DNA of 64,000 nucleotides from Ylistrum balloti (taxonomy: Eukaryota): the NCBI RefSeq assembly GCF_031769215.1, contig NW_026782034.1:434001-498000 (forward strand), written 5' to 3'. Position 1 is the first letter of the stretch. Each line of letters starts with the position of its first letter. Of the stretch, positions 1 to 64,000 are shown in pieces. A model generated the notes under the pieces. It had not been told where the DNA came from and did not search any database. It was given only the letters and a program-made list of their open reading frames with translations. The position numbers and the translations under genes are program-made.

Positions 1-115
1 TCTGGTACAACTTTATTGTACATTTATTCAGGATAAATCTGGTACAACTTTTTTGTACATTTATTCAGGATAAATCTGGTACAACTTTATGGTATATTTA
101 TTCATAATAAATACG
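1..115. repeat. 37-bp tandem repeat, about 3 copies, truncated by the window start
   Basis: tctggtacaacttt(a/t)ttgtacatttattcaggataaa starts at 1, 38 and 75. Confidence 0.85.
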
Positions 116-4300: not shown

Positions 4301-5235
4301 AGTCTTCTTGTCCTAGGAATGTCTTTTTGCCCAATAATAAGTCTTCATGTCCCAGGAATGTCTTTTTGCCCAATAGTAAGTCTAGTTGTCAAGGAATGTG
4401 TTTTTGCCCAATATTGAGTCTACTTGTCCCAGGAATGTCTTTTTGCCCAATAGTAAGTCTTCTTGTCTCAGGAATGTGTTTTTGTCCAATAGTGAGTCTA
4501 GTTGTCCCAGGAATGTGTTTTTGCCCAGTAGTAATTCTAGTTGTCCAGGAATGTGTTTTTGCCCAATAGTAAGTCTAGTTGTCTCAAGAATGTGTTTTTG
4601 TCCAATATTGAGTCTACTTGTCCCAGGAATGTGTTTTTGCCCCATAGTGAGTCTAGTTGTCCAGGAATGTGTTTTTGCCCAATAGTGAGCCTAGTTGTCC
4701 CAGGAATGTCTTTTTGCCCAATGGTAAGTCTTGTTGTCCCAGGAAAGTGTTTTTGTCCAATAGTGAGTCTAGTTGTTCCAGAAATGTCTTTCTGCCAAAA
4801 TAGTAAGTCTTGTTGTCCCAGGAATGTCTTTTTGTCCAATAGTAAGTCTAGTTGTCCTAGGAATGTTTTTTTTGCCGAATGGTAAGTCTCCTTGTCAAGG
4901 AATATGTTTTCGCCCAATAATGAGTCTAAATGTCCCAGGAATGTGTTTTTGCCCACTAGTAAGTCTTCTTGTCCTAGGAATGTCTTTTTGCCCAATAGTA
5001 AGTCTAATTGTCCTAGGAATTTTTTTTGCCCAATAGTAAGTCTAGTTGTACCAGGAATGTGTTTTTGCCCAATAGTAAGTCTTGTTGTCCCAGGAATGTG
5101 TTTTTGTCCAACAGAGAATCTTGCTGTTCCAGGAATATCATTTTGCCAAATAGTAAGTCTTGTTGTTGTCCAGGAATATGTTTTTGCCAAAAAGTGAGTC
5201 TAGTTGTCCAAGAAATGTCTCTTTGCTCAATAGTG
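1375..5235. repeat. 38/39-bp minisatellite, about 100 copies, with higher-order blocks
   Basis: Unit gtc(c)caggaatgt(g/c)tttttgcccaatagt(g/a)agtctagtt, degenerating at both edges. It explains all MSRNVFLP... ORFs. Confidence 0.97.
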
Positions 5236-5544: not shown

Positions 5545-8500
5545 CTGAAAAGGTAAAAAAAATGTCAGGCTTTCAACTTTCAACTTCAGCTTTCAAACAA
5601 TCACTGGTTATATTACAGGACTATATCAAATTCATAAGGTTGCTGCTGAACACACACAAGTTTCCCGATTTTACTGTTCACACTCCGTATACACCGACAA
5701 AAGGTGGGAAGACACAACCAAACAGACGATCAAAATTTCCTACTAGTCAAGATAAACAAAACCTGTAGATAATAGTGAAGATTGTTATCAATTCTTCACA
5801 AGGTGTGATTTCAAAATGTTCAATACAAGACACCAGAGTGACCTTGAATGTGAATCAGTCCTTTAACTGATAAATCCCCCTGTACACAGCTATTTCAGGT
5901 CCTGTTACATAACAGAGGTTCCTCAGTACATCCCTAAGGATCACATGGCTTGGATTTCATTTTTTATTAATATATGTCAATTAAAAGGGAGATAACAGAA
6001 CAACTAGGTAATTTATCAGTTCAAAAGTCATTTGCATTGGAATGTCTTTGTCAAACTCAAAAGCTCCACTTTCTTTTTTATATATATTAAATTCTTAAAG
6101 TCACACACAAACTGTGTTGTATACTTGTTTGCAGTAAACTCCTGATGTTATGAGAATCATAGGTGTATAAATATTCTCCATTAGTACCAGATGGAAAATT
6201 AGATCAAACATAATCACATATGACTATTTAAGTGATATTTACTCCGAGTTAAAATTGCCTGCTATTTTAGAAGTCCTAAGAAATTTCAGCTAATCTAGTT
6301 GTAGAAGTTACAGATAGTTGGATTAATAATGCTATACCAGTACACTACATATGTTGATTTGTTGAACATTGTCCAGTAGTCTTTGAGAAAATGTTCAGTA
6401 AAGTTCAAAGCAAACTTCAATTTGACCATATCATTTATTTAACGGCAAGTATGATATTTTTTTTATTAAATTTTATCTGAAGTTACATGCTGCATGTGAG
6501 TTTATCTTTTTATACACTATCTAAGCATCAAATCCTAGCTATCTTGTACAAAGCTAGGTATATCCACTCATTATATCTGACCTTTTCTTAACCCTCGCCC
6601 TCAAACCCTGGACTCAGTCCCTTAGTTGCCTTATCCTTAATCTACATGGGATGAATTTGGCAAAAAACTTTGCTCATTTTTTTGGAAAATGTTTGATGCA
6701 AGCCACATTATATATACTGGTACAGTATAGTCTTTTTTTTTAATTGAAATTTCCTGCATGAAATATTGTAAATTTCTGAAAATCCTTAATTTATGTGTTT
6801 TTCACTGAATTTTTATCAGGTTCAAATTTGTTTATCTTTTAAATTACAATCCATACACAGAAACACTAGAATGACTTTACAGGTCATTTCATGCTTCCAA
6901 ATCAATACACTTTAAAACACAAACTTTGATTCAGGATTATCTAAACCTAAATATAAAAGCATTTACATTTTTTTTTCACGTAAAATCGAAAACAAAGCCT
7001 TCATAATGTTTGTTGTCGGGATAATTTTACTGTACTTGACAAAGTGCAGGTACCATCACAATTACTGGGCTGCCAGTACACAACAGTACAATAGCGTGCA
7101 TATATATATATATATAGAAACTTGGTAAGTGTGTTCAGATCTAATTTACTGTAACAGAAAAATACAAATGATGCATTGATACCGTATCACTCTGCTACTC
7201 TTTCAACCAGAAAACTGATAATGAACCTGCCTCAGTTCATGTTTCAATTCATTCCCTGGGTATATCTGTTTCAATGAATTCAAATATCATATCCATTAAA
7301 AAATCAAACTTCCTTCAGTAAATACTTTATGGGCTATACAATTACTGTGTTTTATTTTCTTTCACACAAATCTACAAACCTCAAAAGGAAACAAATCTGT
7401 GTGATCAGTATCAGTATGAGTATCTGCTATGTGAACACGTTGACCAGAGATCCCAGGGGATCTTAGTGCTCATCATAGTATTATCTTTCTAAGTTCTTTA
7501 ACAATTCAAACTTTCTCTTCATCTTTGTTTCATTTCTTTCCAATTAATTACATAATTGTAAATCTATATATAAAATTTGAAATGATCCATCCAGAACTTC
7601 TCATGAAATATTGACAAAAATCTTTTACTGTCAAAATCAAAGATGGCTGTCTGTCCTCCACTTTGATTTTATATTTCGTTAAAATATGGAAAATACAAAG
7701 CTAGAGACCAAAGGGAGCCTACATGTAAAATTTGAGAATGAATTTGAAAAAATTTAAGAAATAACAAGCCATTTTGTTTTTCTGATTAATCTAAAAAATA
7801 TTATGAAAGTTTTTAATTCTTTTTCTGGTATAACATCACATAGTCAAATTCTTAGTCAAACAGTCAAGACTTCATATAGAAGTCTATATTAGTGAATATG
7901 GACTGTATATAAGTAAATATAGGACTGTATATAAGTAAATATAGGACTGTTAATAAATTAATATAGGACTGTATATAAGTAAATATAGGACTGTTAATAA
8001 GTTAATATAGGACTGTATATAAGTAAATATAGGACTGTTAATAAGTTAATATAGGACTGTTAATAAGTTAATATAGGACTGTAATAAGTTAATATAGGAC
8101 TGTATATAAGTAAATATAGGACTGTTAATAAGTTAATATAGGACTGTTAATAAGTTAATATAGGACTGTATATAAGTAAATATAGGACTGTTAATATAGG
8201 ACTGTATATAAGTAAATATAGGACTGTTAATAAGTTAATATAGGACTGTATATAAGTAAATATAGGACTGTTAATAAGTTAATATAGGACTGTATATAAG
8301 TAAATATAGGACTGTTAATATAGGACTGTATATAAGTAAATATAGGACTGTTAATATAGGACTGTATATAAATAAATATAGGACTGTTAATAAGTAAATA
8401 TAGGACTGTATATAAGTAAATATAGGACTGTTAATAAGTTAATATAGGACTGTATATAAGTAAATATAGGACTGTTAATAAGTTAATATAGGACTGTATA

Positions 8501-11500
8501 TAAGTAAGAATTATACAAGAACATTACGACCATTATGACGATATATTAGTCAGCAATTCCTTCACAGAACTATTTAACAGAATCACTTAAAACAGAGCCA
8601 ATTACATCTGTCATGTAGTTTTCAGGGTCTATAATTGCCCGACAATTTATGACTGAGGACAAATGGAAGATTCTTTTTTTCATTCATAAAAATGAATGTA
8701 TGATATAATTTCCTGTCTATCACAGCCTGTCACCACGTCCTGTCTGGTGTCACACAGAACACAATGAAATTTGCACCAAAAATACCAGACAAAGATTAGT
8801 ATCAATCACATTTCTTCACAGGGTACAAGGACAGTTCCACACAGCTTCCAAACCAATTAGCACTTGCTAAATACTGATGACATCTCCAGCTTCCCTGCTG
8901 TACCTGACTCAAAGGCCACTGTTATGCCTTGACAGATTATACCTGGCCAGGTTTCATTAACATCATTAACTTTAAAAGTCTGGTTTTAATTCTCAAAAGC
9001 TGTTTTTCGTAAAGCAACTAACAATACATTTATAACTTTTGCATTGTTACAACTCGTAACAGAATTTACAATATAGATTTTTTCTGTTATTATCATAACC
9101 ACTGTTCTAATTATGTAAGTTATTTCAGAATTCACACCACAGACTTTTTTCTGTTGTTATTATCATAACCACTACTCAATTATGTAAGAAAAGCCAGGGC
9201 ATCAGGTTACACATGAACAGTCGTAGAATATCTGTACAGCTAAGGAATTCTGATGTAATGATAATCACCAAATACATGTTATTTAGTCATTATATTACAA
9301 TTAAATCTGTTGTTAATATGGAAATAATGAATCTATCATTTGTCACAAGTACTCGTGTAAGTTCATGTCAGTACTGCCAAGGACAGTCTCAAAGAACTGT
9401 ATATCATAAAACTTGACTGAGGTCTTGTCACGCTAGGCTGTGAATGTAAACAACTCATTTGCTGGGAATATAGTCTGGATCTTTTGAGGTGGAGTGTCCT
9501 TGAAGTAGCTGGTGGCTACCTCACTGAACAACAAACAGGAGGCCCATCACATGTTATCTACAACCATTAGGGTAAAGAGTCTTGCTCAAGCACACAACCA
9601 TATCAACACAGATCAATCCATTTTTCTTTCTCAGCTTCCTGAGAAACACAAACCACCACAGGTAAGAGCTTAAACTAAATCTGTTCACAAAATATCTTGT
9701 ATACAATCTTTCAAAATTTCAAAAATGGTCAAGGGTGACCATTGACCTATAACTTTGACCAATTACAACCAAAATCAAATCAGACATTAAACTTCATCTT
9801 ATGATGCTAAGCTACAGAAATGAACTAGTTCTGCATGGGATTCATGACATACAAGCTTTGCACCAATGGACACACAGATGTACAAAGTGATTACTAAATA
9901 CCCACACACCCATCCGCCTACCCTTCAGTAGTATTTAGTGATGGTATAAAAATGTAGGAGCCAGATAGCCTACACTTCAAACGTGAAATGAAAATATCAA
10001 ACCGAGACAATTGTCTCGTACTGTAAAAGATCCGGCTTCTGTTTCTCAGCGTAGGATGACTTGAATGTGTCTTGTCTGAAATATGGAACTGATAGACCTC
10101 TACTGATGTTTACAAGGTATTTGGTTCAGTGTCAGATGACCCTAGAAATTTGTAATAATAGGAGGTGATCAATTTAAAGGCATCATGGGAGCTATAGATG
10201 AGAGACCAGAGCTCACTTCTCTAGTTTTCTTCATTGTTATTACCCCATCAATATCCACAGACGACAGACAGTCTGAGATACACCATGGCTTAACTATCAA
10301 CACAGCTCTGTTAATGGTATCCCTGTACCAGATCATGTGTTCAGTCTGATCCCAATGGTATCCTGGTCAGATCATGTGTTCTCTGTCTGATCCCAATGGT
10401 ATCCTGGTACCAGATCATGTGTTCTCTGTCTTATCCCAATGGTATCCTGGTCAGATCATGTGTTCTCTGTCTGATCCCAATGGTATCCTGGTACCAGATC
10501 ATGTGTTCTCTGTCTGATCCCAATGGTATCCTGGTCAGATCATGTGTTCTGTCTGATCCTAATGGTATCCTGGTCAGATCATGTGTTCTCTGTCTAATCT
10601 CAATGGTATCCTGGTATCAGATCATGTGTTCTCTGTCTGATCCCAATGGTATCGTGGCACCAGATCATGTGTTCTCTGTCTGATCCCAATGGTATCCTGG
10701 TATCAGATCATGTGTTCTCTGTCTGATCCCAATGGTATCCTGGTACCAGATCATGTGTTCTGTCTGATCCCAATGGTATCCTGGTCAGATCATGTGTTCT
10801 CTGTCTGATCCCAATGGTATCCTGGTACCAGATCATGTGTTCTCTGTCTGATCCCAATGGTATCCTGGTATCAGATCATGTGTTCTGTCTGATCCCAATG
10901 GTATCTTGGTCAGATCATGTGTTCTCTGTCTAATCTCAATGGTATCCTTGTACCAGATCATGTGTTCTCTGTCTGATCCCAATGGTATCCTGGTCAGATC
11001 ATGTGTTCTCTGTCTGATCCCAATGGTATCCTGGTACCAGATCATGTGTTCTCTGTCTGATCCCAATGGTATCCTGGTACCAGATCATGTGTTCTCTGTC
11101 TGATCCCAATGGTATCCTGGTATCAGATCATGTGTTCAGTCTGATCCCAATGGTATCTTGGTCAGATCATGTGTTCTCTGTCTAATCTCAATGGTATCCT
11201 TGTACCAGATCATGTGTTCTCTGTCTGATCCCAATGGTATCCTGGTCAGATCATGTGTTCTCTGTCTGATCCTAATGGTATCCTGGTACCAGATCATGTG
11301 TTCTCTGTCTGATCTCAATGGTATCCTGGTATCAGATCATGTGTTCTCTGTCTGATCCCAATGGTATCCTGGTCAGATCATGTGTTCTCTGTCTGATCCC
11401 AATGGTATCCTGGTCAGATCATGTGTTCTCTGTCTGATCCCAATGGTATCCTGGTCAGATCATGTGTTCTGTCTGATACCAATGGTATCCTGGTCAGATC

Positions 11501-14500
11501 ATGTGTTCTCTGTCTAATCCCAATGGTATCCTGGTATCAGATCATGTGTTCTCTGTCTGATCCCAATGGTATCCTGGCACCAGATCATGTGTTCTCTGTC
11601 TGATCCCAATGGTATCCTGGTACCAGATCATGTGTTCTCTGTCTGATCCCAATGGTATCCTGGTACCAGATCATGTGTTCTCTGTCTGATCCCAATGGTA
11701 TCCTGGTATCAGATCATGTGTTCTCTGTCTGATCCCAATGGTATCCTGGTCAGATCATGTGTTCTCTGTCTGATACCAATGGTATCCTGGTACCATATCA
11801 TGTGTTCTCTGTCTGATCTCAATGGTATCCTGGTATCAGATCATGTGTTCTCTGTCTGATCTCAATGGTATCCTTGTACCAGATCATGTGTTCTCTGTCT
11901 GATCCCAATGGTATCCTGGTCAGATCATGTGTTCTCTGTCTGATCCCAATGGTATCCTGGTACCAGATCACGTGTTCTCTGTCTGATCCCAATCGTATCC
12001 TGGTCAGATCATGTGTTCTCTGTCTAATCTCAATGGTATCCTTGTACCAGATCATGTGTTCTCTGTCTGATCCCAATGGTATCCTGGTCAGATCATGTGG
12101 TCAGATCATGTGTTCTCTGTCTGATCCCAATGGTATCCTGGTACCAGATCATGTGTTCTGTCTAATCTCAATGGTATCCTGGTCAGATCATGTGTTCTCT
12201 GTCTGATCCCAATGGTATCCTGGTCAGATCATGTGTTCTCTGTCTGATCCCAATGGTATCCTGGTCAGATCATGTGTTCTCTGTCTGATCCCAATGGTAT
12301 CCTGGTACCAGATCATGTGTTCTCTGTCTGATCCCAATGGTATCCTGGTACCAGATCACGTGTTCTCTGTCTGATCCCAATCGTATGAATAATCTTACTG
12401 TCTGGTGAAGAGGGAGGGCTACTGAACACCAAACTGTCACCATCGATAACTAAAATGTAGTTAACTATTACAGTGTAAATACAGAAACAAATCACAGTGG
12501 AATATACAAAATTCTATATATGTCAAGTAATGTCAAGTATTTTTATCATGTGTAGAACCATTTCCTGAGTTTAACTGCATTGAAATCATTTTCATCTTTT
12601 AATTTCACAATTTCGTATCTGTTTTAAGTAAATCCTCTGTGAGATTCCATACAATACCTGATATTACCTCCAATGACTTTTACTGCAATTTTATTTATAT
12701 AAATTTAATGGATGATTGGATGGAAACCCAAGTGACTGCTATCTGATCACCGATCAACATGTGTTACTTTTTGTGTCACAATATATCCTTATGGACCAAC
12801 CTACAGACAAGATCATTCTGTCTGGAATGATTTTTTTCATTTGTCTTATGTAAATGTATTGCCTCTGTTTTAATACTATTTTATCAGTCAAACTATCACA
12901 GAGGAAACTTTTTTTTGATGTTGTGTGATGTCTCCGTGACTTATTTAGTCTGTTTCACATATAAGTATATTGTTCAAAGATCATATTGATTACATTCCTG
13001 AAACTCTTTCAAAAATACAAACTGGAAATATATGTATGTAGAATCACAGGGAGCATTCCTCCTCGCCGAATTTACCATAACATAAGCTCAGAGGCATGCG
13101 CTTAAAATCTGACTGAAAGTAGGGGGTGGGCTTATTACAAGACAATATCTTTTCCGCTAAGGTGTGGGTCAGCTTATTATCAAGTATGGGCTTACTGCAA
13201 AATAAATATGTTTCTTAGTTTACTGCCAAAATAGATAGGTTCCTTGGCTTATTGAAAAATAAATATATTTCTTAGCTAATTGCAAAACAGATATGTTTCA
13301 TGGCTTATTGCGAAATAGTTATGTTCCTTAACTTATTGCAAAATAGATCTGCTTCACGGCCCATTGCAAAACAGATATGTTTCTTGGCTTATTGCAAAAT
13401 AGATCTGTTTAATGGCTTATTGCAAAATAGATATGTTTAACGGCCCATTGCAAAACAGATATGTTTCTTGGCTTATTGCAAAACAGATATGTTTCATAGC
13501 TTATTGCCAAATATATGTTCCTTGGCTTATTACAAAACAGGTATGTTTCTTGGTTTATTGCAAAATAGATATGTTTCATGGCTAATTGCATATTAAATAT
13601 GTTAAGAAACACAATCCCCAACTTGTTATGATCAAAGTATCTGTCTGCAATCCTTCAAAATACAAGGACACCAACTGAAGGCACCTATAATCATACTATA
13701 TGATATAAATTATCTCTGGGCACTTTTTTCAAAGTTTTAAGATTCTATTTATATTTAATTAGGGTAATGAAATGTCAGTTGATACCAGTGTTTCTGGCAG
13801 ATCAAGATATAGCCAATTAATATTGAGTTGAATTTATGAAACCAAGTAAACTGGCCACTGAAACGCATTGGTGCTGATTAATAAGTACACAAATCATGAT
13901 TAGCTTCCAAGTCTGATGACATCACAAACATACTAAAGATATTGATCATAAATCATACCAATCATGTTTCAGGTCTCATCACAATACACAATGGCATTGA
14001 TTACAAATATTTCAAATCAACTTTCAGGCCTATCAATGCCCTAGCTACAGTTCAATGTTGCTGCATATCTTTTGCCTCGCAGCGATCATAAAATACACAT
14101 TAGATAGAACCAGATAAAATCCTAATATTTTTTTGGTCAATTCTACAGAAAGTTGCGTGACAATGTATAAACTCCAGCAGAATGCACTGTCTTCTCAGTG
14201 AATCTAATAAGCCCTATCTATAAAGAATGCACTCTAAAATCAACATAGTTTTTGTGATGAACTGATAGCAGGGTTCCAGATCCCAAGCCACAAGACAGGA
14301 TATCATCACTGCGTCACATTTATCATGTCTGCTGGTAACTCCTATTACATCTCAAAAATGAGTAGAACAGATTTTTGATATAAAATAAAAAAGAATTCTG
14401 ACATTTTGAAGTAGATTTCTAGGTCACAGGGCCAAAGAGACTTGAAATATATTTAGTATGGTATATAAAGATGTCCTTTTTCAGTGAAATCCACAGAGAT

Positions 14501-51404: not shown

Positions 51405-51585
51405 TATATTAAAATAATATTCATCACCATGCTGATTGAAGTCAAAAGATGTTAAGGAACATTATATTGAAAATTATTCATCACTGTCCTGCTGAAAGTC
51501 AAATTCAACCTGATATTTAGCACTATATTGAATAATATTCATCACTGTCCTGCTGGAAGTCAAAGTCACCCTAATATTTATCAGC
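51405..51585. repeat. diverged ~60-bp triplication
   Basis: ttcatcac(t/c)(g/a)t(c/g)ctg...aagtcaaa recurs near 51420, 51478 and 51539. Confidence 0.65.
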
Positions 51586-52522
51586 AATAGATACACTAAG
51601 GTAAATGAAACCTTGATTAAGGTACAGCGACAGACAAATAGACCAACAGGTGTTTTGTGTCAAAGAAACATTCACAATTTATCAGTTTTATAATGGTAAC
51701 AGTAAATTTTGCATGGAACTCATATGCTGTAATATTTTTATCAAAATATATGTTAACTCAATTTTCATCAAATTAAGAATCAAAATGAGAAATTCTATTT
51801 GTATCAGAGATCTATATGCTCAGGTTTTTTCCAAATTAAAATGTTCACCTCCCCATCTCCAAAACTTTTTTTTGAATACTCGTAATTAAAGAGCATCTTT
51901 CTTGTGATCCTGTGTAACCTAGACAATCATGATGAAATATATTTAATGCTGGTAACACTAGTTTATTTGTGTATTTCCATTATAACCAAGTTTGCCTTGA
52001 AAGTTCCTTCAGGCTGCAGTGCATGGTTTTCACATCAGAAGATTTACGAGTCAATGTTTTCATACTGGATGCATACCTGGTTACTAAATCAGAAATAATT
52101 TTATGTCATACTGTAACCACCAATCTTTCTTCAGGATTTCAAAGTTTCACTACTGAAACATAAGTAAGTTTTGTGCACAGTACTGTTAATGCACATGACT
52201 AGCAACAATCCTTAATGCATGTTTTGTTTTTGCAATCAAGAGTGCTGTTTAGTCAGTAATTTTTTAATTTTTGCAACTTTCTTTTAAAACAATAGAATTT
52301 TATTTTAAGGAATACAAATTTTGCAATCCAGATGTTAAGGGGTGTTTAAAACACACATCTCATTATTTTACTGATGAAATTTTCAAGATCAGGTTTATGT
52401 ACTGCAAAACAGGAAAAATATTATTTCCATCAAATTAACTGACATAAATAAAACAAATTCAGCAAACATCCAACTTCACTTTTGCAACATAAAATACAAC
52501 CACCGTTCACATCTACCAGCCC

Positions 52523-52695
52523 TCATACTCGCTCATACAGATACAGGTAAGCCAGATCTCGAGGCGGGTTCTCAGACAGTGCCACCTTTTCATCATTAAA
52601 TATCACCCAGCGACCATCTTTACGGATGTGACACACGTAATGGCCGACCATTGTAGATGTACCCATGTGACTAATGAACGCTTTCAGGCGGTATT
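52523..52695 (-). CDS. USP5: USP5 last coding exon, (K)[25 protein letters not shown]...LYERV*
   Basis: Acceptor ttgtttccacag, phase 1, TGA at 52523-52525. Confidence 0.95.
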
Positions 52696-55600
52696 CTGTG
52701 GAAACAATAGAAACAACTTTAAGTATAAATTTAATTTAGTTTAGGTTAAGTATTTCAATTATACACACATATCTTAACCTACATTACCATTCTGTTATAA
52801 GTTCTTAACCTACACAACTATTCTGTTAGAAGTTCTTAACCTACATAACTATTCTGTTATAAGTTCTTAACCTACATAACTGTTCTGTCAGAAGTTCTTA
52901 ACCTACATAACTATTCCGTTATAAGTTCTTAACCTACACAACTATTCTGTTAGAAGTTCTTAACCTAAATAACTATATTGTTATAAGTTATACAGAAGCT
53001 TTCACATATATATTAAGACCATTAGAGCGATGAAACCATTTATTATGATATCCCACTAGTTATAATTTTTCTGTGTATAAATATTCCCTCTATAAAAAAC
53101 CCAACTCTATCCTGATATTTTCCCATATTTCATATCAGTTAGGATATTTTCTTCTGCTCAGAAATGATTTTTGAAAGCTTGTAATTTCCAGGCTTGTGTC
53201 AATATTAGACATGTTGGCCTTTCATTGTGACACCAATTATCCACTAAATAGTTTTAGCCAGTCCAAACTGTATAGGGTATATTACAAACGCCCCAGGCCT
53301 GTAAACAACTAAGTACTTCAATTTATCATACAACAAACTTAACCAACATTAAAGAAACACAGAAGTATAAGTATATACCACTAAGTTGTACGATATTTTA
53401 AAACTGAACACAAAGAAAACCTGTCACACACAATAGTATCACTGTGCACTTATTAGGAAAGTAGGTGTTTATGACTAGTATACTCAGAGCTTATCCTACA
53501 TACTTTCTCGTCCGTCCCTGAAGGCAGGCTGTGATGGGCCAGCACCTGCACCTGCTGGCTCTTCAGTTTCCATGGGAGTATTTAGTTCATCAACATGGCT
53601 AAAGATCCAGTCAGCAGCTCGTTCCACATTGTTATCCTAATGAACATAAAATATTCATAAGCTTATGTAAAGTTCTGGTGAGAATCATATGATTTCTCAT
53701 TTTTATTACAAGCAAATGCTAAGAGATATAAATTTATAGAAAATATCTGATTTCTTTAAAATACAAACTACTATTTTCCACTGTCTATATATCACAGAAG
53801 TCAAAATTCAACAAAGAAATTGTTCAAATTCATGTTTCCAGATTTCATGTCCTTGTTAAATTAAGAAAAGAAAAGTGATATGCACAACTAATGTCTCAAG
53901 GTTACCTTAAAGTTGGTGACATGTTTTGTATGGTACAGGTCAGCTGATCAAAACCAAGGTAGCTCCCTTATATTCCTGACATTACCTATGACATTCAGGA
54001 CCACTTACTATGGCAGAGAGTGACATTTACTGTGACCTTGAGTGTTACATACTGTGACATTGAGCTTTTCATACAGTGACCTTGAGTGTTACATACTGTG
54101 ACCTCGAGTGTTACATACTGTGACCTTGAGTGTTACATACCGTGACATTGAGCTTTACATAATGTGACCTTGAATGTTACATACTGTGACCTTGAGTGTT
54201 ACAAACTGTGACCTTGCAATTTCAATATTGTGGCCTGGAGTGACATTATTTTGACCTTGAGTGTCATTTCTGGTGACCTTACATATCTTACCGTGGCCTT
54301 GAGTGCCTTAATAGCCTGGTCTCTAGTGAATCCCATGGACATAATCATGACAAGACTATCCTCATTTGGTATAAAGTCTTTGGCTGCTCCTTTCTTCACT
54401 CCGGGTGGCGTGAACGGACTGGAGAAATCTGGAGTTAGACATAAAGATTAAGAGGTCATCACTACAAAGGAATGATTTGATTTATACTATCTTACGTCAT
54501 TAAAGGAAGATCTTCATGTGTATGCAAGGTGAGTGTGTGTGTTGAATGCATGTTTTTGTGAGATGTTCGTGTAAGCCTCTTTTGTGACAGTGTTTAAATG
54601 AAGGTGACTTTATAGTGCAACCACACTGAAGTATACCATGAAATGCCATTAATTTAATTAGTCTAGATTCATATTTTTTTTATTTCATTCAATAAATACA
54701 TCTCAAGAGTGCAAGGTTGTAGTATAAAAATTCAGTTTTGATAGATTTTGCCTGCTCCTTTTCATGGTACATAATTCTCACTCTTGTTTAAATCTTTCTT
54801 TGTGTTCACATCAGTGTCTTACATTTAATCACACTGACCTGTGTATCCTATGTGTTCACACTTACCTGGATCTCCCATATGTTCCATGACCCAATTCATG
54901 GCAGCCTCTGCTCCACTGTTGTTAGTGTTGAACACTGCTCGTTTACAGCCCTCTAGAGGAAACCCCATATCCATGAGTTGGGCCACCACTGCCTCATCAA
55001 TCTCTATAACTACAGAAAACAATCTGATCTACACTGGATGTTTTATAAGGCAGAAGTATAATGCAGATTTCACTGCTATACAACTATATATAATAGATAA
55101 TATTTAGAAACTGACACACTATGAACATTATGAACTTTGTAACATACAAAGTTAGGGATGGACAGAGTGTAAAACCTATAGTCTCTTTAGTAGTGCCAGC
55201 TCCTTACTAATAAAAATAAAATACAACCTTTCAAAATATCATAGGACCATGTAAATCATAGGAAAACTATATCTTAAAGCTATAATGACGACAATAATTT
55301 CTAATCAAATCTATATGTAGTAACAATGGTTTAGATAGTTACTTCAGTATGCAACTTTGTTGAAGAACTAATAATATCAGTAAAATGTTGAGAAACTGCA
55401 GTAAAGTAAGGTCTATTGTATATCTGTAGGGATAACAGACAGGAAACACTATTTCATAGCTGGGATCACAAGGATGTTTGCTTTAAAGCAGATAACAAAT
55501 GTAGTTTACCAGGGGTTGAATCATCCTGTTCCTGTGGTAGCTCCTCCTCTCCTGGCTGCAGGCCACACCCCCTTAATGACGCTAAATCTATTTCCTCGGG

Positions 55601-58600
55601 CACATCTATAGAAACATCTGTAAGAGAGTGTATAAATCATAGGCTTGTTTTTCATGTCATTCTGCTGACCTTTTTTAAGGTCACCTGAAGGCATTTATCT
55701 TCCTGGGCTGGTCACACCAATATCATGATTCCTTACTTAGGTCAGTAATACAAATTATATTCCCTAATAAGGTCAAGTCAATGCCATATTTCATAATTCA
55801 AGTTTAGATTAAACCATGTTTCCTAATTTAACACTGAATGAAGGTCACGATTCCTACGTCTGATTGCTGGTTATCACTGCCTGTGTTGTTCGTGTTACGT
55901 ACCAAGCTTTTTAGGAACCCAGTCCTCCCCAACTGTAAATTTCTTAAGCTGTACCATCAAATAATCGGGAAATGAAGAAAGACGTGTGGTTCTGAAAATG
56001 AAATAGGATTCTCAGTCTTCGAAGTAGCATCTTCAAACAATATATTTTTTCAAGGGTTATGGTAATAGGAATTTGTCTTATCATAATAAACTGCATACCT
56101 TTTCTACTAATTGCATTTAATTCACTTCAATGTTGATGTGAGGGTTACAGAGAACTAATTACAATGTATCTCTAAGGGATCAAAGAAACATTTCTGTCAA
56201 AACCTTAAGCAGTGTAAAATGTTTTTTTATTTCTTACTTCCTTGCTGTACATTTTCCTTTCAGTGCAGAACTGTAAAAGTCATCAACAATTTCTTCAGCT
56301 TGGAAACAATGTAGGCAAGCAGACAAAGGAATTCTGGGTCGCACAAGCTCTTTAGGATCCCTGTCATTAATAAATGTTAAATTCATTAAGTCTAAGCAGT
56401 TATTTTTTTATTTTTGATCAGAAATTAAATATACACCTTCTAAGAACCATGCTTTTCCCTTATTCATTTAAATCATTGTTTTTAATTGTTTTCGATTCTC
56501 TTTTATCAATACATTAAATAAAAGACCTGCTAAAAATCCTGATAAGACTGTAGACTTCAGAAATAAAAGAACTTGAACTTAATCTGTCTAATTTTTAATA
56601 AGCATTTGATATATGTACAGATGTAAATCAAAATAATTTTTAATCATTACATTAAAAAAAGTATTACATAAACTTTTAAAACACCCTCGTTTAATGTGAC
56701 ACAATAAATAGACACCAAAGTAACAATTAGACTTACATTCTTTTTCCTTCTGCTTCTACTTCCTTCTTCTTTGCTTCATACTGTTTCACCTCATCTGTTA
56801 ACAAACAGTTACACATCATCACATACTGTGTCACCTCATCTGTTAACAAACAGTTACACATCATCACATACTGTTTCACCTCATCTGTTAACAAACAGTT
56901 ACACATTATCACATACTGTGTCACCTCATCTGTTAACAAACAGTTACACATCATCACATACTGTGTCACCTCATCTGTTAACAAACAGTTACACATCATC
57001 ACATACTGTGTCACCTCATCTGTTAACAAACAGTTACACATCATCACATACTGTGTCACCTCATCTGTTAACAAACAGTTACACATCATCACATACTGTG
57101 TCACCTCATCTGTTAACAAACAGTTACACATCATCACATACTGTGTCACCTCATCTGTTAACAAACAGTTACACATCATCACATACTGTGTCACCTCATC
57201 TGTTAACAAACAGTTACACATCATCACATACTGTGTCACCTCATCTGTTAACAAACAGTTACACATCATCACATACTGTGTCACCTCATCTGTTAACAAA
57301 CAGTTACACATCATCACATACTGTGTCACCTCATCTGTTAACAAACAGTTACACATCATCACATACTGTGTCACCTCATCTGTTAACAAACAGTTACACA
57401 TCATCACATACTGTGTCACTCATGTTACACATCATCACATAACATCTGTTCACCTCATCTGTGTTCTGTTAACAAACAGTTACACATCATCACATACTGT
57501 GTCACCTCATCTGTTAACAAACAGTTACACATCATCACATACTGTGTCACCTCATCTGTTAACAAACAGTTACACATCATCACATACTGTGTCACCTCAT
57601 CTGTTAACAAACAGTTACACATCATCACATACTGTGTCACCTCATCTGTTAACAAACAGTTACACATCATCACATACTGTGTCACCTCATCTGTTAACAA
57701 ACAGTTACACATCATCACATACTGTGTCACCTCATCTGTTAACAAACAGTTACACATCATCACATACTGTGTCACCTCATCTGTTAACAAACAGTTACAC
57801 ATCATCACATACTGTGTCACCTCATCTGTTAACAAACAGTTACACATCATCACATACTGTGTCACCTCATCTGTTAACAAACAGTTACACATCATCACAT
57901 ACTGTTTCACCTCATCTGTTAACAAACAGTTACACATCATCACATACTGTGTCACCTCATCTGTTAACAATTCAAACAGTTACACATCATCACATACTGT
58001 GTCACCTCATCTGTTAACAAACAGTTACACATCATCACATACTGTGTCACCTCATCTGTTAACAAACAGTTACACATCATCACATACTGTGTCACCTCAT
58101 CTGTTAACAAACAGTTACACATCATCACATACTGTGTCACCTCATCTGTTAACAAACAGTTACACATCATCACATACTGTGTCACCTCATCTGTTAACAA
58201 ACAGTTACACATCATCACATACTGTGTCACCTCATCTGTTAACAAACAGTTACACATCATCATCTGTTAACACATACTGTGTCACCTCATCTGTTAACAA
58301 ACAGTTACACATCATCACATACTGTGTCACCTCATCTGTTCACAAACAGTTACACATCATCACATACTGTGTCACCTCATCTGTTAACAAACAGTTACAC
58401 ATCATCACATACTGTGTCACCTCATCTGTTAACAAACAGTTACACATCATCACATACTGTGTCACCTCATCTGTTAACAAACAGTTACACATCATCACAT
58501 ACTGTGTCACCTCATCTGTTAACAAACAGTTACACATCATCACATACTGTGTCACCTCATCTGTTAACAATTCAAACAGTTACACATCATCACATACTGT

Positions 58601-61600
58601 TTCACCTCATCTGTTAACAAACAGTTACACATCATCACATACTGTGTCACCTCATCTGTTAACAAACAGTTACACATCATCACATACTGTGTCACCTCAT
58701 CTGTTAACAAACAGTTACACATCATCACATACTGTGTCACCTCATCTAACAAACAGTTACACATCATCACCTCATCTGTTAACAAACATACACATCAACA
58801 CATCATCACATACTGTGTCACCTCATCTGTTAACAAACAGTTACACATCATCACATACTGTGTCACCTCATCTGTTAACAATTCAAACAGTTACACATCA
58901 TCACATACTGTGTCACCTCATCTGTTAACAATTCAAACAGTTACAACAAACAGTTACACATCATCACATACTGTGTCACCTCATCTGTTAACAAACAGTT
59001 ACACATCATCACATACTGTGTCACCTCATCTGTTAACAAACAGTTACACATCATCACATACTGTGTCACCTCATCTGTTAACAAACAGTTACACATCATC
59101 ACATACTGTGTCACCTCATCTGTTAACAAACAGTTACACATCATCACATACTGTGTCACCTCATCTGTTAACAAACAGTTACACATCATCACATACTGTG
59201 TCACCTCATCTGTTAACAAACAGTTACACATCATCACATACTGTGTCACCTCATCTGTTAACAAACAGTTACACATCATCACATACTGTTCATCTGTTAA
59301 CACCTCATCTGTTAACAATTCAAACAGTTACACATCATCACATACTGTGTCACCTCATCTGTTAACAAACAGTTACACATCATCACATACTGTGTCACCT
59401 CATCTGTTAACAAACAGTTACACATCATCACATACTGTGTCACCTCATCTGTTAACAAACAGTTACACATCATCACATACTGTGTCACCTAATCTGTTAA
59501 CAAACAGTTACACATCATCACATACAAACAAAACAGCCTTTTTAAATGTTTTTATGGCAAACTATAACAAATTAACTATTTACACATTTATTAAAATTGG
59601 ATAGAACACTAAAATCAGTAACCACACTGAACATACATCCTTAGGTCAGCTGAAGTTTGATTCCTGCTCATTTCACTTTATAAATAAAATGTTAACCAAA
59701 TCAGAAGATTTACCATTATGCAGTGAATGGTGACCCACAACATTTAGATGAAAACATGACAAATATGACATGACAAGAATGGAGAAGTGATCCTTGACAT
59801 ACACCGTCTCACCTTCATGATATATGATACACACCTTTGTTATTGGCAGCCTCCACAGGTACAGGTAGTGCCAGACAATAGTCACACCTGTTCGTATATT
59901 TCACTTTATGACTCTGCATACATTCTACTCTCTCCTCCACTTGGAACTTCATACTTCCTGTTGGATTGACCTGCCCCCCAGTATTTCTCTGAAAAATGCA
60001 CATTTTCTAAAATAGACACCTCAGGTATTTCTAAACAAGCCCTTCGTTGCTGGAATGCAACAAACTCAGATTTAACTATATGATTTATATATGCTTTCTC
60101 AGCAAAGGTAGTGTCCACCTGTGCAGGATTGAATGGCGTAAGTACAAATGTATTTGATTGGAGTTGTTATTGTTTTGTTGTTTTGATGAATAAACAGTTA
60201 AAAGAAAAAGTAGAAATTTCTTTATTTCTGTTTAATTACTGCCATTTCATATAACAGATTAAATATATATGCGTGCGTGCGTGTGTGTGTGCATGTGCAT
60301 GTGTAATGTTTATAACTGTCTATATGTATTCAAGATATAGTACAGCAGAATCGCCATTGTACCTCATATCTACACATATTTTGACAGTTGGTAACCAGGT
60401 TTACAAAAAGATACAGAATAAGTGATAAACAAAGCCTCTGACTGGTCCATCAGTAACATAAACGTTTACCTCTGTGAGGTTTAAGACCAGAACATGCATC
60501 ACATGCATATCATCATGAATTGATAGGTATTACTTCTCATTACAGTAAGTATAAATCTATTGCCTTTTCATTCCAATGAAAACTAACATCTCTGCTGATT
60601 TCCTCCAATGAAAAGGGAGAACACAGATCATCTTATCATGTTTACCAATCAAAAAGACTGATACAAATACATGTATTCAAATATTTTTCTTTTATGTAGC
60701 TAATATTTTAGTATTTTACTACTTAATCATGCAAGAAACAGAAACATTAAACACACTTGTGAAGCACATTTTTTGTTACTGAAGACTCTGATAAATCATA
60801 CATATACTAACCTCAATAAGGTTTATTAAATGCAAGAGGAATTCTTGTGCATCCTGTTGACGTTTGGTAGAAAACTCTGGATGGCCTTGTCCAATAAGTG
60901 TTTTAAACATCTGTGGACGTACACCTGTTGGTGGCTGTAAATCATATAAACAGTAATTCATTTCTATAGGTTTTAATGTCACAGGTTTTAAATAGTTTCA
61001 TGTGTATTACATCAAATGGTAATGTACTTCTGTAGCCTTTCAGGTTTTAAGTTGTAAGTAATCCTGTCCATTTCTTTGTTGTTGGATTGTTCATCCATGT
61101 AGTCTAACATCATTTTCATCTATTCATCATAAAAAACATTTCCTATTCATAGTAACAGTGACCTTGGCCATTGACCTTTGGATATGAAAAGCAATACCAA
61201 GCAAGCACTTATGATAAGGAAGCACTGTATGAAGTTTGAGTCTGATTGTCTATATTGAACTCAATTTATTGCTAAAAACCTTTGTGCGGACCATGGCGCT
61301 GACATAGTTATACCTGTATGTCGCCTTTGGCAGGTGACACAAAAAACAGGTGTTCAAAAGTGTATGAGAAATGTTAGCATGGTCTCTAACGTTCGATACA
61401 TGTAGTTTGACAATACAATTGACATAACAAGACAATGCCATTTTTATATCTGTCGCTTCACTTTCTATGCTGTTATCTGGTAAAAATTGCTTACAAAACT
61501 GTTTTCTGATCCCAAATTAAAGAGATCCCGAAATGTAGAGGGAAGAAATTTAATGAAAACCAACCTATACAAGATACACTTCAGTACCTAGAGAGCAATG

Positions 61601-63697
61601 TCCTGATTAGGGGCAGTGATCAGTGGAAAATACTTATAATCATGTTTTTTTCTTTCCAAATTTCTTTTTTATAAATGAAGTGATGAAAATCAGTAGATAT
61701 CAGTTGGTACTTATATAAACACTGATTTCTCCGCAGAAAAATGTGAAAAAATGCTAATGATCAGATGAGATATAAGGATAGTACCATGCAGTTGAAGATT
61801 TCCTTCACACAAAATAAGCCATAGTATTATGCACTTTTAAATAGTATTAGGTAAGTATTGATGAGTATTTTATGAAAGGTCTGAAAGCTACTTACCAGTA
61901 TGTTTTCACTGACATCCTCTGGTGGCGGTTTAGAGTACTCTCCACTGTTAAGGCCGAGTCCTAACTTGGCCCTAAAAATACCAATAATAAACATACCACA
62001 TACTATATATACAAGCACCGTGGTCTAGTGGTAGGACATTGCGATAGTGATGGAATGGTCACTAGTTAATTTCTGACATGGATACCTTGCTGTATCTGAG
62101 GACAATATACTTTTATTCTAGATTTGTTACAGAGGACTCAACTGTAATATTGTCTACAAGACATTAGTGCCTAATGGCAGCTCTGGCTGTATACTCCCCA
62201 GAGAAGATTACGTCTAGTAGCAAGAGCAAGCTGTCAACCAAGTCTTCTTCAAAATACAGGAGGAATATAGGAATATTTTTTCAACAGATCTAGGAGTTTT
62301 TTGCTAGTTTTGAGGCAAAATAGTGGAGTTTTCCAAACGAAAATCCTTTCAATCAAAGTCATTTATACTAACAATTCTTATGCATAGCAAATCATAATCT
62401 GAATGGGCACCTAAAAGGCCAATAACATGTTGTACTGCCTTACAAGGTGCCCATACAGGTGATAAAGAGATGCACTGAATCATGTTCTGGTGGCTGGTGA
62501 TGCTGGTGATGCTGTTACTTACAAATTCTCTAACTTGTAAAATAAAGAAGCCAAAAGCAGTATCAAAGAAATGTTTACAATCTCTACATTTATTGGTGAA
62601 AAAATTCCTGAAAAATATAGGAATACTTTTCAAAAAATAGGAAAATATACTAAATAAAGGTCTTTGAACCAAAGTATAGGAAAATATAGTAATAAAGGAA
62701 TTGGTTGACAGCCTGCAAATGGTCTGATAACCATGGACATTAATGGTAATTTGTGAACTATTTTGAGATAGCCTTGTTACTGTAATAAAGAGGTATGTAA
62801 AACCTTGTTATCTATAGAGTTCCTTACTTTTGAATGAATGCAAATATGCGTGCTGAGTTTAGTATTGTCTTTGGTCTATTTTTTATTAAGCTACTGAAAC
62901 CATTAAGGGAATGCTATACTAACATATACATGAGTTTACCATAGTACTGGAGGGATTACTCACATCTGTACTACAAAGTCGCTGGATGGGTCCTCTGAGG
63001 CACACTGGAAAATGTCTACAGCATTGTCACAGTACCTGTGGAACACAATAATAAGGCTTTTATTTCTCAGCTATAAAGGGAAAATCTCAAACAAACAAAC
63101 AATAAACTACCACTTCTTCTGTAACCCATATCTACACAATAACCATTTCTCTGTATCATGATCCATCTATATAAAACAACTCCCATCCTTTGTACAAAAA
63201 ACTTCTGCAATTAAACAACCCCTTTCTTTGTACACGAACCCACCTCTATAAAACAACCCCTCCCTCTGTGCAAAACCCACCGTAATACAACATGCCCTTA
63301 TTCTAGACACAAACCCATCTAAATAAAACAACCCTTCCTTTGAACAACCCACTTATATACAACTTCTCCCTTCTGGAGAATAACCCACTTTTATACCAAA
63401 ACATTTTCCTCTGAACAACAACCCACCTCTCTACAAAGCTCCTCTCTCCATATGACAACCCCTTCCTCTCTTCGACAACTATTTCCTCTCTGGAACAACC
63501 TACCTCTGTACAAAGTCTGGTATGGTGAATAGAACCTGCATCACAGAGTTCATGTAGCAACTGTTACCAAGGTTACGCATGCCTGTGTATCCTGGACCAT
63601 ACAATGGAGTTAGCTTGCTTCCAGCTTCCTGGATTACGTCCCACTCTCCAATCTTCTGGTTCAAATCAATTTCCATCTCTACCATTGTCTTGTCTGT
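52523..63697 (-). CDS. USP5: ubiquitin carboxyl-terminal hydrolase 5/13 (isopeptidase T), 13 C-terminal exons; 5' exons lie beyond the window
   Basis: Spliced translation contains [16 protein letters not shown] (Cys box), [28 protein letters not shown], two UBA domains ([22 protein letters not shown]) and [16 protein letters not shown]...WVIFNDEKV (His box). All borders are GT-AG with consistent phases. Invertebrates usually have a single USP5/13 orthologue. Confidence 0.96.
52768..52990. repeat. 31-bp minisatellite, about 7 copies
   Basis: aacctacataactattctgtta(t/g)aagttctt. Confidence 0.9.
53504..53636 (-). CDS. USP5: USP5 exon, 133 nt, [14 protein letters not shown]...FRDGRE
   Basis: Acceptor tttatgttcattag, donor A|gtatgt; end of UBA2. 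Confidence 0.93.
54010..54306 (-). repeat. 22-bp minisatellite derived from an exon end plus 5' splice site, about 13 copies
   Basis: Sense unit acactcaaggtcaca|gtatgta versus authentic gcactcaaggccacg|gtaagat. Confidence 0.85.
54292..54428 (-). CDS. USP5: USP5 exon, 137 nt, (D)FSSPFTPPG...QAIKALKAT
   Basis: Acceptor ctttatgtctaactccag, donor ACG|gtaaga; start of UBA2. Confidence 0.93.
54866..55009 (-). CDS. USP5: USP5 exon, 144 nt, UBA1 (V)[17 protein letters not shown]...EHMGDP
   Basis: Acceptor gttttctgtag, donor G|gtaagt. Confidence 0.95.
55510..55617 (-). CDS. USP5: USP5 exon, 108 nt, (D)[10 protein letters not shown]...[14 protein letters not shown]
   Basis: Acceptor cactctcttacag, donor G|gtaaac. 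Confidence 0.93.
55903..55991 (-). CDS. USP5: USP5 exon, 89 nt, (K)[29 protein letters not shown]
   Basis: Acceptor cctatttcattttcag, donor G|gtacgt. Confidence 0.95.
56238..56360 (-). CDS. USP5: USP5 exon, 123 nt, (M)[15 protein letters not shown]...KGKCTAR
   Basis: Acceptor catttattaatgacag, donor AA|gtaaga. Confidence 0.93.
56737..56794 (-). CDS. USP5: USP5 exon, 58 nt, (D)[18 protein letters not shown]
   Basis: Acceptor tgtttgttaacag (last unit of the 45-bp array), donor AT|gtaagt. Phases 1 and 2 fit both neighbours; matches the EELLEYEEKK-like helix of USP5. Confidence 0.88.
56778..59523 (-). repeat. 45-bp minisatellite made of the exon's 3' splice site and first bases, about 60 copies
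   Basis: Sense unit gtatgtgatgatgtgtaactgtttgttaacag|atgaggtgacaca. It fills about 90% of the 3040-nt intron 56795-59834. Confidence 0.97.
59835..59988 (-). CDS. USP5: USP5 exon, 154 nt, RNTGGQVNP...VEERVEC...[10 protein letters not shown]
   Basis: Acceptor tgcatttttcag, donor G|gtgtgt. Confidence 0.92.
60812..60934 (-). CDS. USP5: USP5 exon, 123 nt, [11 protein letters not shown]...[16 protein letters not shown]
   Basis: Acceptor tttatatgatttacag, donor GAG|gttagt. Confidence 0.95.
61150..61346 (-). mobile_element. HINE-like element, 5' part
   Basis: Minus strand starts tttttgtgtcacct-gccaa-aggcgaca (terminal hairpin after a T run). Internal gtgaccttggccattgacc motif. Confidence 0.45.
61896..61971 (-). 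CDS. USP5: USP5 exon, 76 nt, (M)[25 protein letters not shown]
   Basis: Acceptor ggtatttttag, donor CTG|gtaagt. Confidence 0.94.
62014..62205 (+). mobile_element. decayed tRNA-derived SINE
   Basis: A-box TGGTCTAGTGG at 62021-62031, B box degraded. The downstream gcctaatggcagctctggctgtatactcccca resembles conserved SINE central domains (from memory). Confidence 0.45.
62964..63035 (-). CDS. USP5: USP5 exon, 72 nt, (R)[23 protein letters not shown]
   Basis: Acceptor tattgtgttccacag, donor AT|gtgagt. Confidence 0.92.
63120..63515 (-). repeat. old 36-40-bp tandem array derived from an exon end plus donor, about 9-10 decayed copies
   Basis: The aaccca(c/t) motif recurs every 36-40 nt. Copy 63417-63438 is 20/22 identical to the junction 63494-63515. 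Confidence 0.7.
63504..63697 (-). CDS. USP5: USP5 exon, 194 nt, [19 protein letters not shown]...[10 protein letters not shown]...PDFVQ (catalytic Cys)
   Basis: Acceptor aaaactttcag (short pyrimidine tract), donor AG|gtaggt. Confidence 0.95.
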
Positions 63698-64000
63698 CTG
63701 AAAGTTTTTTCTCCATGTGTCAGTCAAGTGAATTTTTAATGTCATGAAAAGCATAATTCTGGTGGTATACATGTAGGTTTTAATTTGATATCAAATTACA
63801 ATTAATTTTCTATAAGGTCAGCCAATTTCATTTCAAATTTTTAGAATGGACAGTCCATGGATTCATTTGCTATTTTTGAGATTGATCAGTCCAGGAAATT
63901 TGCGTTATTGGGCAGAATTCAACTTACTGTGTCAAAATGAATATTCTATTAATATTAACATTGTTGCTGACCTGATTCAATCATGAATAAACAAGCAAGG

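What the first reader, a model, noticed from the sequence alone, without database searches (positions are those of the whole stretch)
56737..59523. About 60 tandem copies of a 3' splice site in front of an essential USP5 exon, in frame
Seen: every unit carries tgtttgttaacag|ATGAGGTG, identical to the acceptor actually needed at 56795. The unit is 45 nt with no stop in the USP5 frame ([15 protein letters not shown]) over the first ~14 units (ORF 56733-57419). Most units read ACA (T) where the exon has AAA (K); K-type units occur near 56874, 57906 and 58600. Inference: use of any nearby upstream acceptor would insert n x 15 Cys/Met-rich residues into the catalytic domain without a frameshift, so copy number could tune isoform ladders. 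Otherwise exon definition from the single donor at 56736 must reject about 59 identical decoys.
Basis: partly seen in the sequence, partly recalled or inferred. Interest (0 to 1): 0.85.

Follow-up and report, generated by a model that had tools for sequence, protein, structure and literature searches.

The report
Splice-acceptor minisatellite in scallop USP5 intron
An intron of the saucer scallop's USP5 gene is 90% filled by about 60 tandem copies of its own 3' splice site plus the first 18 bases of the next exon. This is an extreme example of a known kind of repeat ("mirage" minisatellite) and most likely stays silent in splicing.

Summary
A 45-nt minisatellite lies at 56777-59525 (60.1 copies, minus-strand gene). 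It carries 55 exact copies of TTAACAG|ATGAGGTG; the last copy is the acceptor of a 57-nt USP5 exon (56794-56738). Thirteen decoys (56839-57379) would add 15 aa each in frame. The other 41 exact decoys run into stop codons.

The window is Ylistrum balloti, a saucer scallop, not a fish. The single RefSeq model of the gene uses the exon-proximal acceptor. Scallop relatives (proteins of four species, RNA-derived contigs of one) show the same junction without any insertion. Pecten and Argopecten keep the junction as a single copy, so the array arose in the Ylistrum lineage from the junction itself, between two GTATG microhomologies.

K-mer depth in an independent DNA run suggests several-fold more copies there, with a different variant mix, so the array is probably unstable.

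No RNA data of this species could be reached, so use of the decoys was not tested.

The structure matches the "mirage" junction minisatellites of amphioxus and mirrors the human F7 IVS7 donor repeat; in both, regular splicing is kept. Other agents of this scan noted the same kind, mostly donor-type, on other pieces of this genome.

Verdict: a new, extreme, acceptor-type member of a known kind. The proposed isoform ladder is unsupported.

The parts
59835..59988 (-). Upstream USP5 exon (residues ~436-486 of XP_060066475.1). It ends AACAAAG|GTGTGT; the last base, 59835, is codon position 1.
   Evidence: Splice-aware reconstruction that reproduces P0313 exactly. Aligns to human USP5 3IHP residues 467-518.
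59526..59834 (-). Non-repetitive 5' part of the intron (309 nt), starting with the donor GTGTGT.
56777..59525 (-). 45-nt minisatellite, about 60 units. Each unit is the last 27 nt of the intron plus the first 18 nt of the exon. It fills 90% of the 3,040-nt intron, and its last 18 nt are the start of the real exon.
   Evidence: Tandem Repeats Finder; 49 near-exact copies; unit census with 40 identical 45-mers.
56795..57379 (-). Block of 13 uninterrupted 45-nt units. Their decoy acceptors (first exon-like bases 56839...57379) would give in-frame, stop-free insertions of 15-195 aa.
57380..59525 (-). Distal part of the array, with 41 exact decoy acceptors. All lead to a stop codon, through indel variants (50-, 51-, 54-, 55-, 63-, 75-, 90- and 131-nt units).
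56738..56794 (-). Authentic 57-nt exon, [19 protein letters not shown](M), residues 487-506. It forms a predicted helix in the USP catalytic domain.
   Evidence: 100% tblastn match of P0313; conserved in scallop relatives; AlphaFold2 helix 486-501 with pLDDT 85-90.
56739..56776 (-). Purine-rich (GAA/GAG-type) run. It follows only the authentic acceptor and is a candidate exonic splicing enhancer.
   Evidence: Read directly from the sequence. Enhancer function is inferred, not tested.
56732..56737 (-). Donor GTAAGT of the 57-nt exon, a strong site.
   Evidence: 71st percentile in a weight matrix built from 48 scallop USP5 donors.
56238..56360 (-). Next USP5 exon downstream ([12 protein letters not shown]...).

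Best explanation
This is a young, hypervariable minisatellite of the "mirage" type. It arose in the Ylistrum lineage by slippage or unequal exchange between two GTATG microhomologies 45 nt apart. These flank the ancestral intron/exon junction: 27 nt of intron tail (branch site, pyrimidine tract, AG) plus 18 nt of exon. The array then expanded to about 60 units or more and is kept homogeneous by array turnover. It has no designed function.

The spliceosome still joins exon 59835 to 56794. Only the last copy is followed by the purine-rich exon body and, 57 nt further on, by a strong GTAAGT donor, so cross-exon (exon-definition) contacts stabilise U2AF/U2 there. The 54 sequence-identical decoys lack that context. 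Each decoy is instead followed 13 nt later by a weak donor-like ACA|GTATGT and then by the next pyrimidine tract and AG.

Occasional use of a decoy would mostly give nonsense transcripts (41 of 54 exact decoys) or, for the 13 nearest, +15n-residue proteins. I expect these to be rare noise.

Shown here: the structure, its origin from the junction, its restriction to this lineage, the annotated use of the last acceptor, and the consequences of decoy use for the reading frame.

Inferred: the mechanism of discrimination, and the silence of the decoys.
For: - Structure and homogeneity.
- Identity of the window: it is 100% identical to Ylistrum balloti GCA_031769215.1. The single RefSeq protein P0313 maps to exon 56794-56738.
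- Relatives: Pecten maximus, Argopecten irradians, Mizuhopecten yessoensis and the RNA-derived contigs L002/L003 all read NK|[11 protein letters not shown]...|DPKELV without an insertion.
- Origin: the orthologous junction TTGTTAACAG|ATGAAGTTGCACAGTATGAAGC is single-copy in Pecten and is conserved in Argopecten. Neither has a 45-nt array. DEV.xY is conserved in distant USP5 proteins, so the exon head is ancestral and the array derives from it. The array begins with GTATG and its last partial unit ends with GTATG.
- Splice-site strength: the unit acceptor scores at the 46th percentile of 48 real scallop USP5 acceptors, and only 0.3% of background AGs score as high. The exon's donor is at the 71st percentile and the unit's pseudo-donor at the 21st.
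- Constraint on the protein: the segment length is fixed in 62 of 70 orthologues, and the exon forms a confident helix.
- Instability: repeat k-mers in an independent DNA run reach 137-220 times single-copy depth, against 3 and 48 copies in the assembly.
- Precedent: amphioxus mirages, including an acceptor-type one in globin BflGb6, do not disturb splicing (PMC3087553, PMC3902484). In the human F7 IVS7 repeat the pseudo-donors stay silent (PMC1557585).
Against: - No RNA of this species was examined. The only run offered was DNA, and no Ylistrum transcript fragment is in the protein collection.
- I do not know whether the RefSeq model rests on RNA-seq or on homology.
- The decoys are average-strength acceptors, identical to the real one from -27 to +18. 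Decoys n=1-4 would still make exons of 102-237 nt, so exon definition alone does not obviously exclude them.
- Arrays of acceptor motifs can be used: expanded CAG repeats act as splice acceptors (PMC10614865).
- Predicted RNA structure does not distinguish the real site from the decoys.
Confidence: 0.72

Rival explanations
1. The decoys are used at an appreciable rate. The nearest 13 give a ladder of USP5 isoforms with +15n Cys/Met-rich residues, and the distal ones give NMD substrates, so array length and composition tune USP5 output.
For: - Thirteen decoys are in frame and open.
- The decoy acceptors are identical to the real one and of average strength.
- Decoys are transcribed before the real site.
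- Extended exons of 102-237 nt are still of normal size.
- Repeats can serve as acceptors (PMC10614865).
Against: - There is a single annotated isoform, and it uses 56794.
- No orthologue among 70 has a 15-residue insertion; the segment length is fixed.
- The insertion would sit at the start of a confidently predicted helix of the catalytic domain.
- Period and open frame are close to chance expectation.
- The run of 13 clean units is not exceptional in an array where 43 of 54 spacings are 45.
- Known mirages and the F7 repeat are silent (PMC3087553, PMC1557585).
Confidence: 0.13
2. The array regulates splicing without being spliced to. A cluster of 54 decoy 3' splice sites, with their weak donors, engages U2AF/U2/U1 unproductively. 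This slows removal of the intron, or detains it, in a way that depends on copy number (as decoy exons do), or it concentrates factors for the real site.
For: - Each unit has an average acceptor and a plausible weak donor.
- The array makes up 90% of the intron.
- Copy number seems to differ several-fold between individuals.
Against: - There is no RNA evidence.
- The array is absent from other scallops, is very young (40 identical units) and is apparently unstable. That fits drift better than a maintained regulator.
- Similar junction arrays are scattered through this and other genes of the genome.
Confidence: 0.08
3. The array was not born from the junction. It is a dispersed satellite or a transposon-borne repeat that landed in the intron, and the exon start was captured from it. 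Alternatively the array is an assembly artefact.
For: Repeat k-mers in run X1 are 4-45 times more abundant than the assembly's copies predict, which other genomic loci could explain.
Against: - The exon head and the intron tail are orthologous to single-copy sequence in Pecten and Argopecten.
- DEV.xY is conserved across animal USP5.
- The unit occurs nowhere else in the 64-kb window.
- An independent contig links the exon to the first unit.
Confidence: 0.04

Closest known systems
[quoted passage not shown]
   Same: - The unit spans an exon-intron boundary.
- The array lies in the intron and abuts the authentic junction.
- The copies keep AG/GT signals.
- Repeat number is unstable between haplotypes.
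- BflGb6 is likewise acceptor-type (3' end of the intron plus 5' part of the exon).
- Regular splicing is reported there, and the annotated model shows it here.
   Different: - The phylum differs: a mollusc, not a cephalochordate.
- The unit is much shorter (45 nt against 150-160 nt in BflGb6), and there are far more copies (about 60, perhaps hundreds, against 3-6).
- Regular splicing was shown there by RT-PCR. Here only the annotated model shows it.
Human F7 IVS7 37-bp VNTR, whose first unit spans the exon 7 donor (PMC1557585)
   Same: A minisatellite seeded from a splice junction gives a run of pseudo-sites identical to the authentic one. The exon-proximal copy is the one used. The pseudo-sites are functional in principle but silent.
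   Different: - There the sites are donors and only a few units exist; here they are acceptors and about 60.
- The 5'-to-3' scanning rule shown for donors picks the first site transcribed. Here the site used is the last one transcribed, so that rule cannot be carried over.
- No mutational test was done here.
Repeat-created acceptor arrays that are actually used: expanded CAG repeats (PMC10614865)
   Same: Many tandem AG acceptors lie downstream of a donor.
   Different: There, RNA-seq shows splicing into the repeat and it causes disease. Here no use is documented, and each unit carries a full branch site, pyrimidine tract and AG taken from a real site.
Intronic VNTRs that modulate splicing of the neighbouring exon, such as ABCA7 (PMC5954066; abstract only was seen)
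   Same: An intronic tandem repeat next to an exon, with variable length.
   Different: I did not check there whether the unit derives from the junction. An effect on splicing is shown there and not here.

Membership tests
Mirage (splice-junction) minisatellite | The tandem repeat unit spans an exon-intron boundary | tested here: met
   The unit is 27 nt of intron tail plus 18 nt of exon head. The last partial unit is the start of the real exon.
Mirage (splice-junction) minisatellite | The array derives from the gene's own junction and is not imported sequence | tested here: met
   Single-copy orthologous junction in Pecten maximus and Argopecten irradians. The exon head encodes the conserved DEV.xY.
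Mirage (splice-junction) minisatellite | The copies keep the splice signal (AG or GT) | tested here: met
   55 exact copies of TTAACAG|ATGAGGTG. The acceptor scores at the 46th percentile of real sites.
Mirage (splice-junction) minisatellite | Length instability between haplotypes or individuals | tested here: inconclusive
   K-mer depth in run X1 suggests about 220 T-type and 137 K-type units, against 48 and 3 in the assembly. Copies at other loci cannot be excluded.
Mirage (splice-junction) minisatellite | Regular splicing is kept | tested here: inconclusive
   The RefSeq model and the homologues use the authentic site. No RNA reads of this species were available.
Alternative 3' splice-site ladder (regulated tandem acceptors) | Transcripts that use more than one of the tandem acceptors | not testable with these tools
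   The only run served was DNA. One annotated isoform. No Ylistrum transcript fragments in the protein collection.
Alternative 3' splice-site ladder (regulated tandem acceptors) | The variable segment is tolerated or conserved in the protein family | tested here: not met
   The segment is 41 residues in 62 of 70 orthologues, range 37-43. The site lies at the start of a confident helix.
USP5 / isopeptidase T | zf-UBP, UCH catalytic domain and two UBA domains; best match to solved USP5 | tested here: met
   Pfam families recorded on P0313 and P0152. Exons match 3IHP (E 6e-26 and 2e-10). Sources name it USP5-like.

The most novel reading that the evidence does not exclude
The array is a natural 3' splice-site competition experiment that leaks. 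A measurable share of USP5 pre-mRNA is spliced to decoys. This gives NMD-targeted transcripts and a few +15n-residue isoforms, so the hypervariable copy number (about 60 to several hundred units) sets USP5 output or intron-removal kinetics differently in each individual.
Probability: 0.15. Interest if true: 0.6.

Novelty: new member of a known kind. Interest (0 to 1): 0.36.

Why it matters
The finding extends junction-seeded "mirage" minisatellites from amphioxus and one human gene to a mollusc. It does so with an extreme acceptor-type example: about 55 sequence-identical, average-strength 3' splice sites directly upstream of the one that must be used, in a conserved housekeeping gene.

It is a ready-made natural substrate for asking how a 3' splice site is chosen among identical competitors: by exon definition and enhancer proximity, by order of transcription, or by scanning. 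This mirrors what the F7 IVS7 repeat did for 5' splice sites. Here the site used is the last one transcribed, not the first.

It is also a practical warning for gene prediction and for read mapping in repeat-rich bivalve genomes.

Tried and rejected
- RNA evidence. The look-up of sequencing runs (kind rna) offered one run. Read laying showed it to be DNA contigs, with uniform depth across introns and no joints. I laid only 55400-56890 (the exon plus two units), because the tool turns away long repeats.
- Annotated or assembled isoforms. A first profile search was dominated by other invertebrates. Searches with P0152 and with P0313:420-590 found no Ylistrum transcript fragments and no protein with an insertion.
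- Wrong starting assumption. I first took the window for a fish. Homology showed it to be a scallop.
- RNA structure as the discriminator. Neighbouring units pair 3' site to 3' site through the near-palindrome CUGUUUGUUAACAG (z = -2.5). The authentic site is just as paired (unpaired fraction 0.11 against 0.12-0.16), so I rejected this.
- Weak pyrimidine tract as an explanation. The site has 10 of 18 pyrimidines, against a gene median of about 12. This is not an outlier, and decoys and real site are identical anyway.
- Selection for the open frame. Period 45 and one open frame are near chance expectation, so this is no evidence.
- The same unit elsewhere. There is none in the window. The scan's sequence index gave a blank, which means nothing.
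- Literature. No paper on junction minisatellites in bivalves turned up in the library.
Full report
**What is there.** Tandem Repeats Finder reports one array at 56777-59525 with period 45, 60.1 copies and 90% matches. The 45-mer is found 49 times within 3 mismatches, 42 of them exact. None is expected by chance, and none lies outside the array. A census of the units gives 40 identical 45-mers and 3 further units with AAA (Lys) instead of ACA (Thr). There are also a few indel variants of 50-131 nt.

On the minus strand, which is the coding strand, TTAACAG|ATGAGGTG occurs 55 times exactly. The copy furthest downstream is the acceptor of a 57-nt exon, 56794-56738, which ends AAT|GTAAGT. The upstream exon ends at 59835 (AACAAAG|GTGTGT). 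The intron is therefore 3,040 nt long, and the array makes up 90% of it.

**Consequences of decoy use.** The intron sits after codon position 1. With that phase, decoys n=1..13 (56839-57379) would insert n x 15 residues ([15 protein letters not shown]) with no stop. All 41 more distal exact decoys meet a stop, because indel variants shift the frame. A period divisible by 3 and one open frame are close to what chance gives, so I do not read them as signs of selection.

**Whose gene it is.**
- The exons match human USP5 (PDB 3IHP).
- The nearest proteins are scallop USP5-like proteins in one 90% cluster: Pecten maximus, Argopecten irradians, Mizuhopecten yessoensis and Ylistrum balloti.
- The locus of the Y. 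balloti protein XP_060066475.1 (P0313), on GCA_031769215.1 contig JAUZWB010000450.1, is 100% identical to window 51523-64000.
- The window is therefore the saucer scallop and not a fish, as I first assumed.
- A splice-aware reconstruction reproduces P0313 uniquely. It places residues 487-506 on exon 56794-56738, so the single annotated isoform uses the exon-proximal acceptor.

**Origin.**
- All scallop relatives, including proteins read from RNA-derived Logan contigs (P0152; L002 and L003), read NK|[11 protein letters not shown]...|DPKELV without an insertion.
- In Pecten the orthologous junction is TTGTTAACAG|ATGAAGTTGCACAGTATGAAGC and is single-copy. Argopecten has TTGATTACAG|ATGAAG... Neither has the 45-nt array.
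- The Pecten intron does hold an unrelated 79-nt array that stops about 210 nt before the acceptor.
- DEV.xY is conserved far beyond scallops. The exon head is therefore ancestral, and the array was copied from the junction, not the other way round.
- The array starts with GTATG (a 32-nt partial unit), and its last 18-nt partial unit ends with GTATG. This is what slippage or unequal exchange between two 5-nt microhomologies 45 nt apart would leave. That step is an inference.

**Reality and instability.** The only sequencing run offered (X1) proved to be DNA of another individual or haplotype. It shows 20 substitutions and 6 indels over 1.4 kb, and uniform depth of 8.79 across exons and introns. 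One of its contigs runs through the exon into the first unit. Repeat k-mer contigs have depths of 1,200-1,937. That corresponds to about 220 T-type and about 137 K-type copies per single-copy equivalent, against 48 and 3 in the assembly. So either the array is several times longer and differently composed in that animal, or copies exist elsewhere in the genome. I could not tell these apart.

**Are the decoys credible splice sites?** I built weight matrices from 48 donors and 48 acceptors of the three scallop USP5 genes. The sites are orthologous, so the sample is small and not independent.
- The unit acceptor scores at the 46th percentile of real acceptors, and only 0.3% of background AGs reach that score.
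- The exon's own donor is at the 71st percentile.
- Each unit also has a donor-like ACA|GTATGT 13 nt after its AG, at the 21st percentile. Real donors CAA|GTATGT and AAA|GTATGT exist in this gene.
- Real and decoy acceptors are identical from -27 to +18. They differ only in what follows. The real one has a purine-rich exon body (56739-56776) and a strong donor at +57. Each decoy has the next U/G-rich intron tail.
- Predicted RNA structure pairs neighbouring 3' sites with each other, but it does the same to the real site, so it does not discriminate.

**The protein side.** An AlphaFold2 model of P0313 (mean pLDDT 79.5) puts the exon in a confident helix, residues 486-501, of the catalytic domain. 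In 70 animal USP5 orthologues this segment is 41 residues long in 62, with a range of 37-43. An insertion of 15 hydrophobic Cys/Met-rich residues has no counterpart anywhere.

**What it is most likely.** I read it as a tolerated, young, unstable junction-seeded minisatellite whose decoys are silent or nearly so. The exon-proximal copy would be chosen through exon definition and enhancer proximity. I give this a confidence of 0.72.

The kind is known. Amphioxus "mirages" are minisatellite-like duplications of intron/exon boundaries and include an acceptor-type case (globin BflGb6). They vary in copy number between haplotypes and, by RT-PCR, do not interfere with splicing (PMC3087553, PMC3902484). 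The human F7 IVS7 37-bp repeat gives a run of silent pseudo-donors identical to the real one (PMC1557585). Earlier notes of this scan pointed me to these names, and I checked the papers myself. Those notes also report many such arrays, mostly donor-type, on other pieces of this genome.

The same USP5 gene holds further junction-adjacent arrays. The present array stands out by being acceptor-type, very homogeneous, and at least ten times richer in copies than the published cases.

**What remains open.** No RNA of this species was reachable, so leakage into the decoys is not excluded. Repeats can act as acceptors: expanded CAG repeats do (PMC10614865). I give 0.13 to appreciable decoy use and 0.08 to a copy-number-dependent effect on removal of the intron.

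**Score.** New member of a known kind; interest 0.36.

Noticed in passing
window 54028-54266: A 22-nt x 10.9 array lies directly behind the donor of the UBA2 exon. Its unit ACTCAAGGTCACAGTATGTAAC echoes the exon end ACTCAAGGCCACG|GTAAG, so it is a donor-type junction minisatellite in the same gene.
   Followed up: partly
window 63163-63346; 52772-52989; 54829-54891: Three more arrays lie next to USP5 exon boundaries.
- A degraded 38-nt x 4.9 array (66% matches) sits behind the Cys-box exon donor.
- A 31-nt x 7 array sits 70-290 nt before the last-exon acceptor. Its unit contains AACAG|AATAG, like the real CACAG|AATAC.
- A 27-nt x 2.4 repeat lies over a donor.
Together they suggest that such arrays are born repeatedly and then decay.
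   Followed up: partly
L005 9931-10901 (Pecten maximus, orthologous intron): An unrelated 79-nt tandem array (about 12 units, 93-100% matches) fills the same intron in Pecten. It ends about 210 nt before the acceptor and does not copy it.
   Followed up: partly
window 1-5200, 8000-8450, 10000-12500: Further long minisatellites give long stop-free repeat ORFs on the minus strand. The window is very rich in tandem repeats.
   Followed up: no
window 56779: The contig of run X1 reads T>A here (Tyr to Phe in the exon, at the edge of the repeat), exactly 31 nt from the contig end. It may be a real polymorphism or an artefact of the assembly graph.
   Followed up: no
window 56795-59525 (each unit): CUGUUUGUUAACAG at every 3' splice site is nearly self-complementary, and UGUUAACA is a perfect palindrome. 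In minimum-free-energy folds neighbouring units pair acceptor to acceptor (192 nt: -37.4 kcal/mol, z = -2.5).
   Followed up: yes
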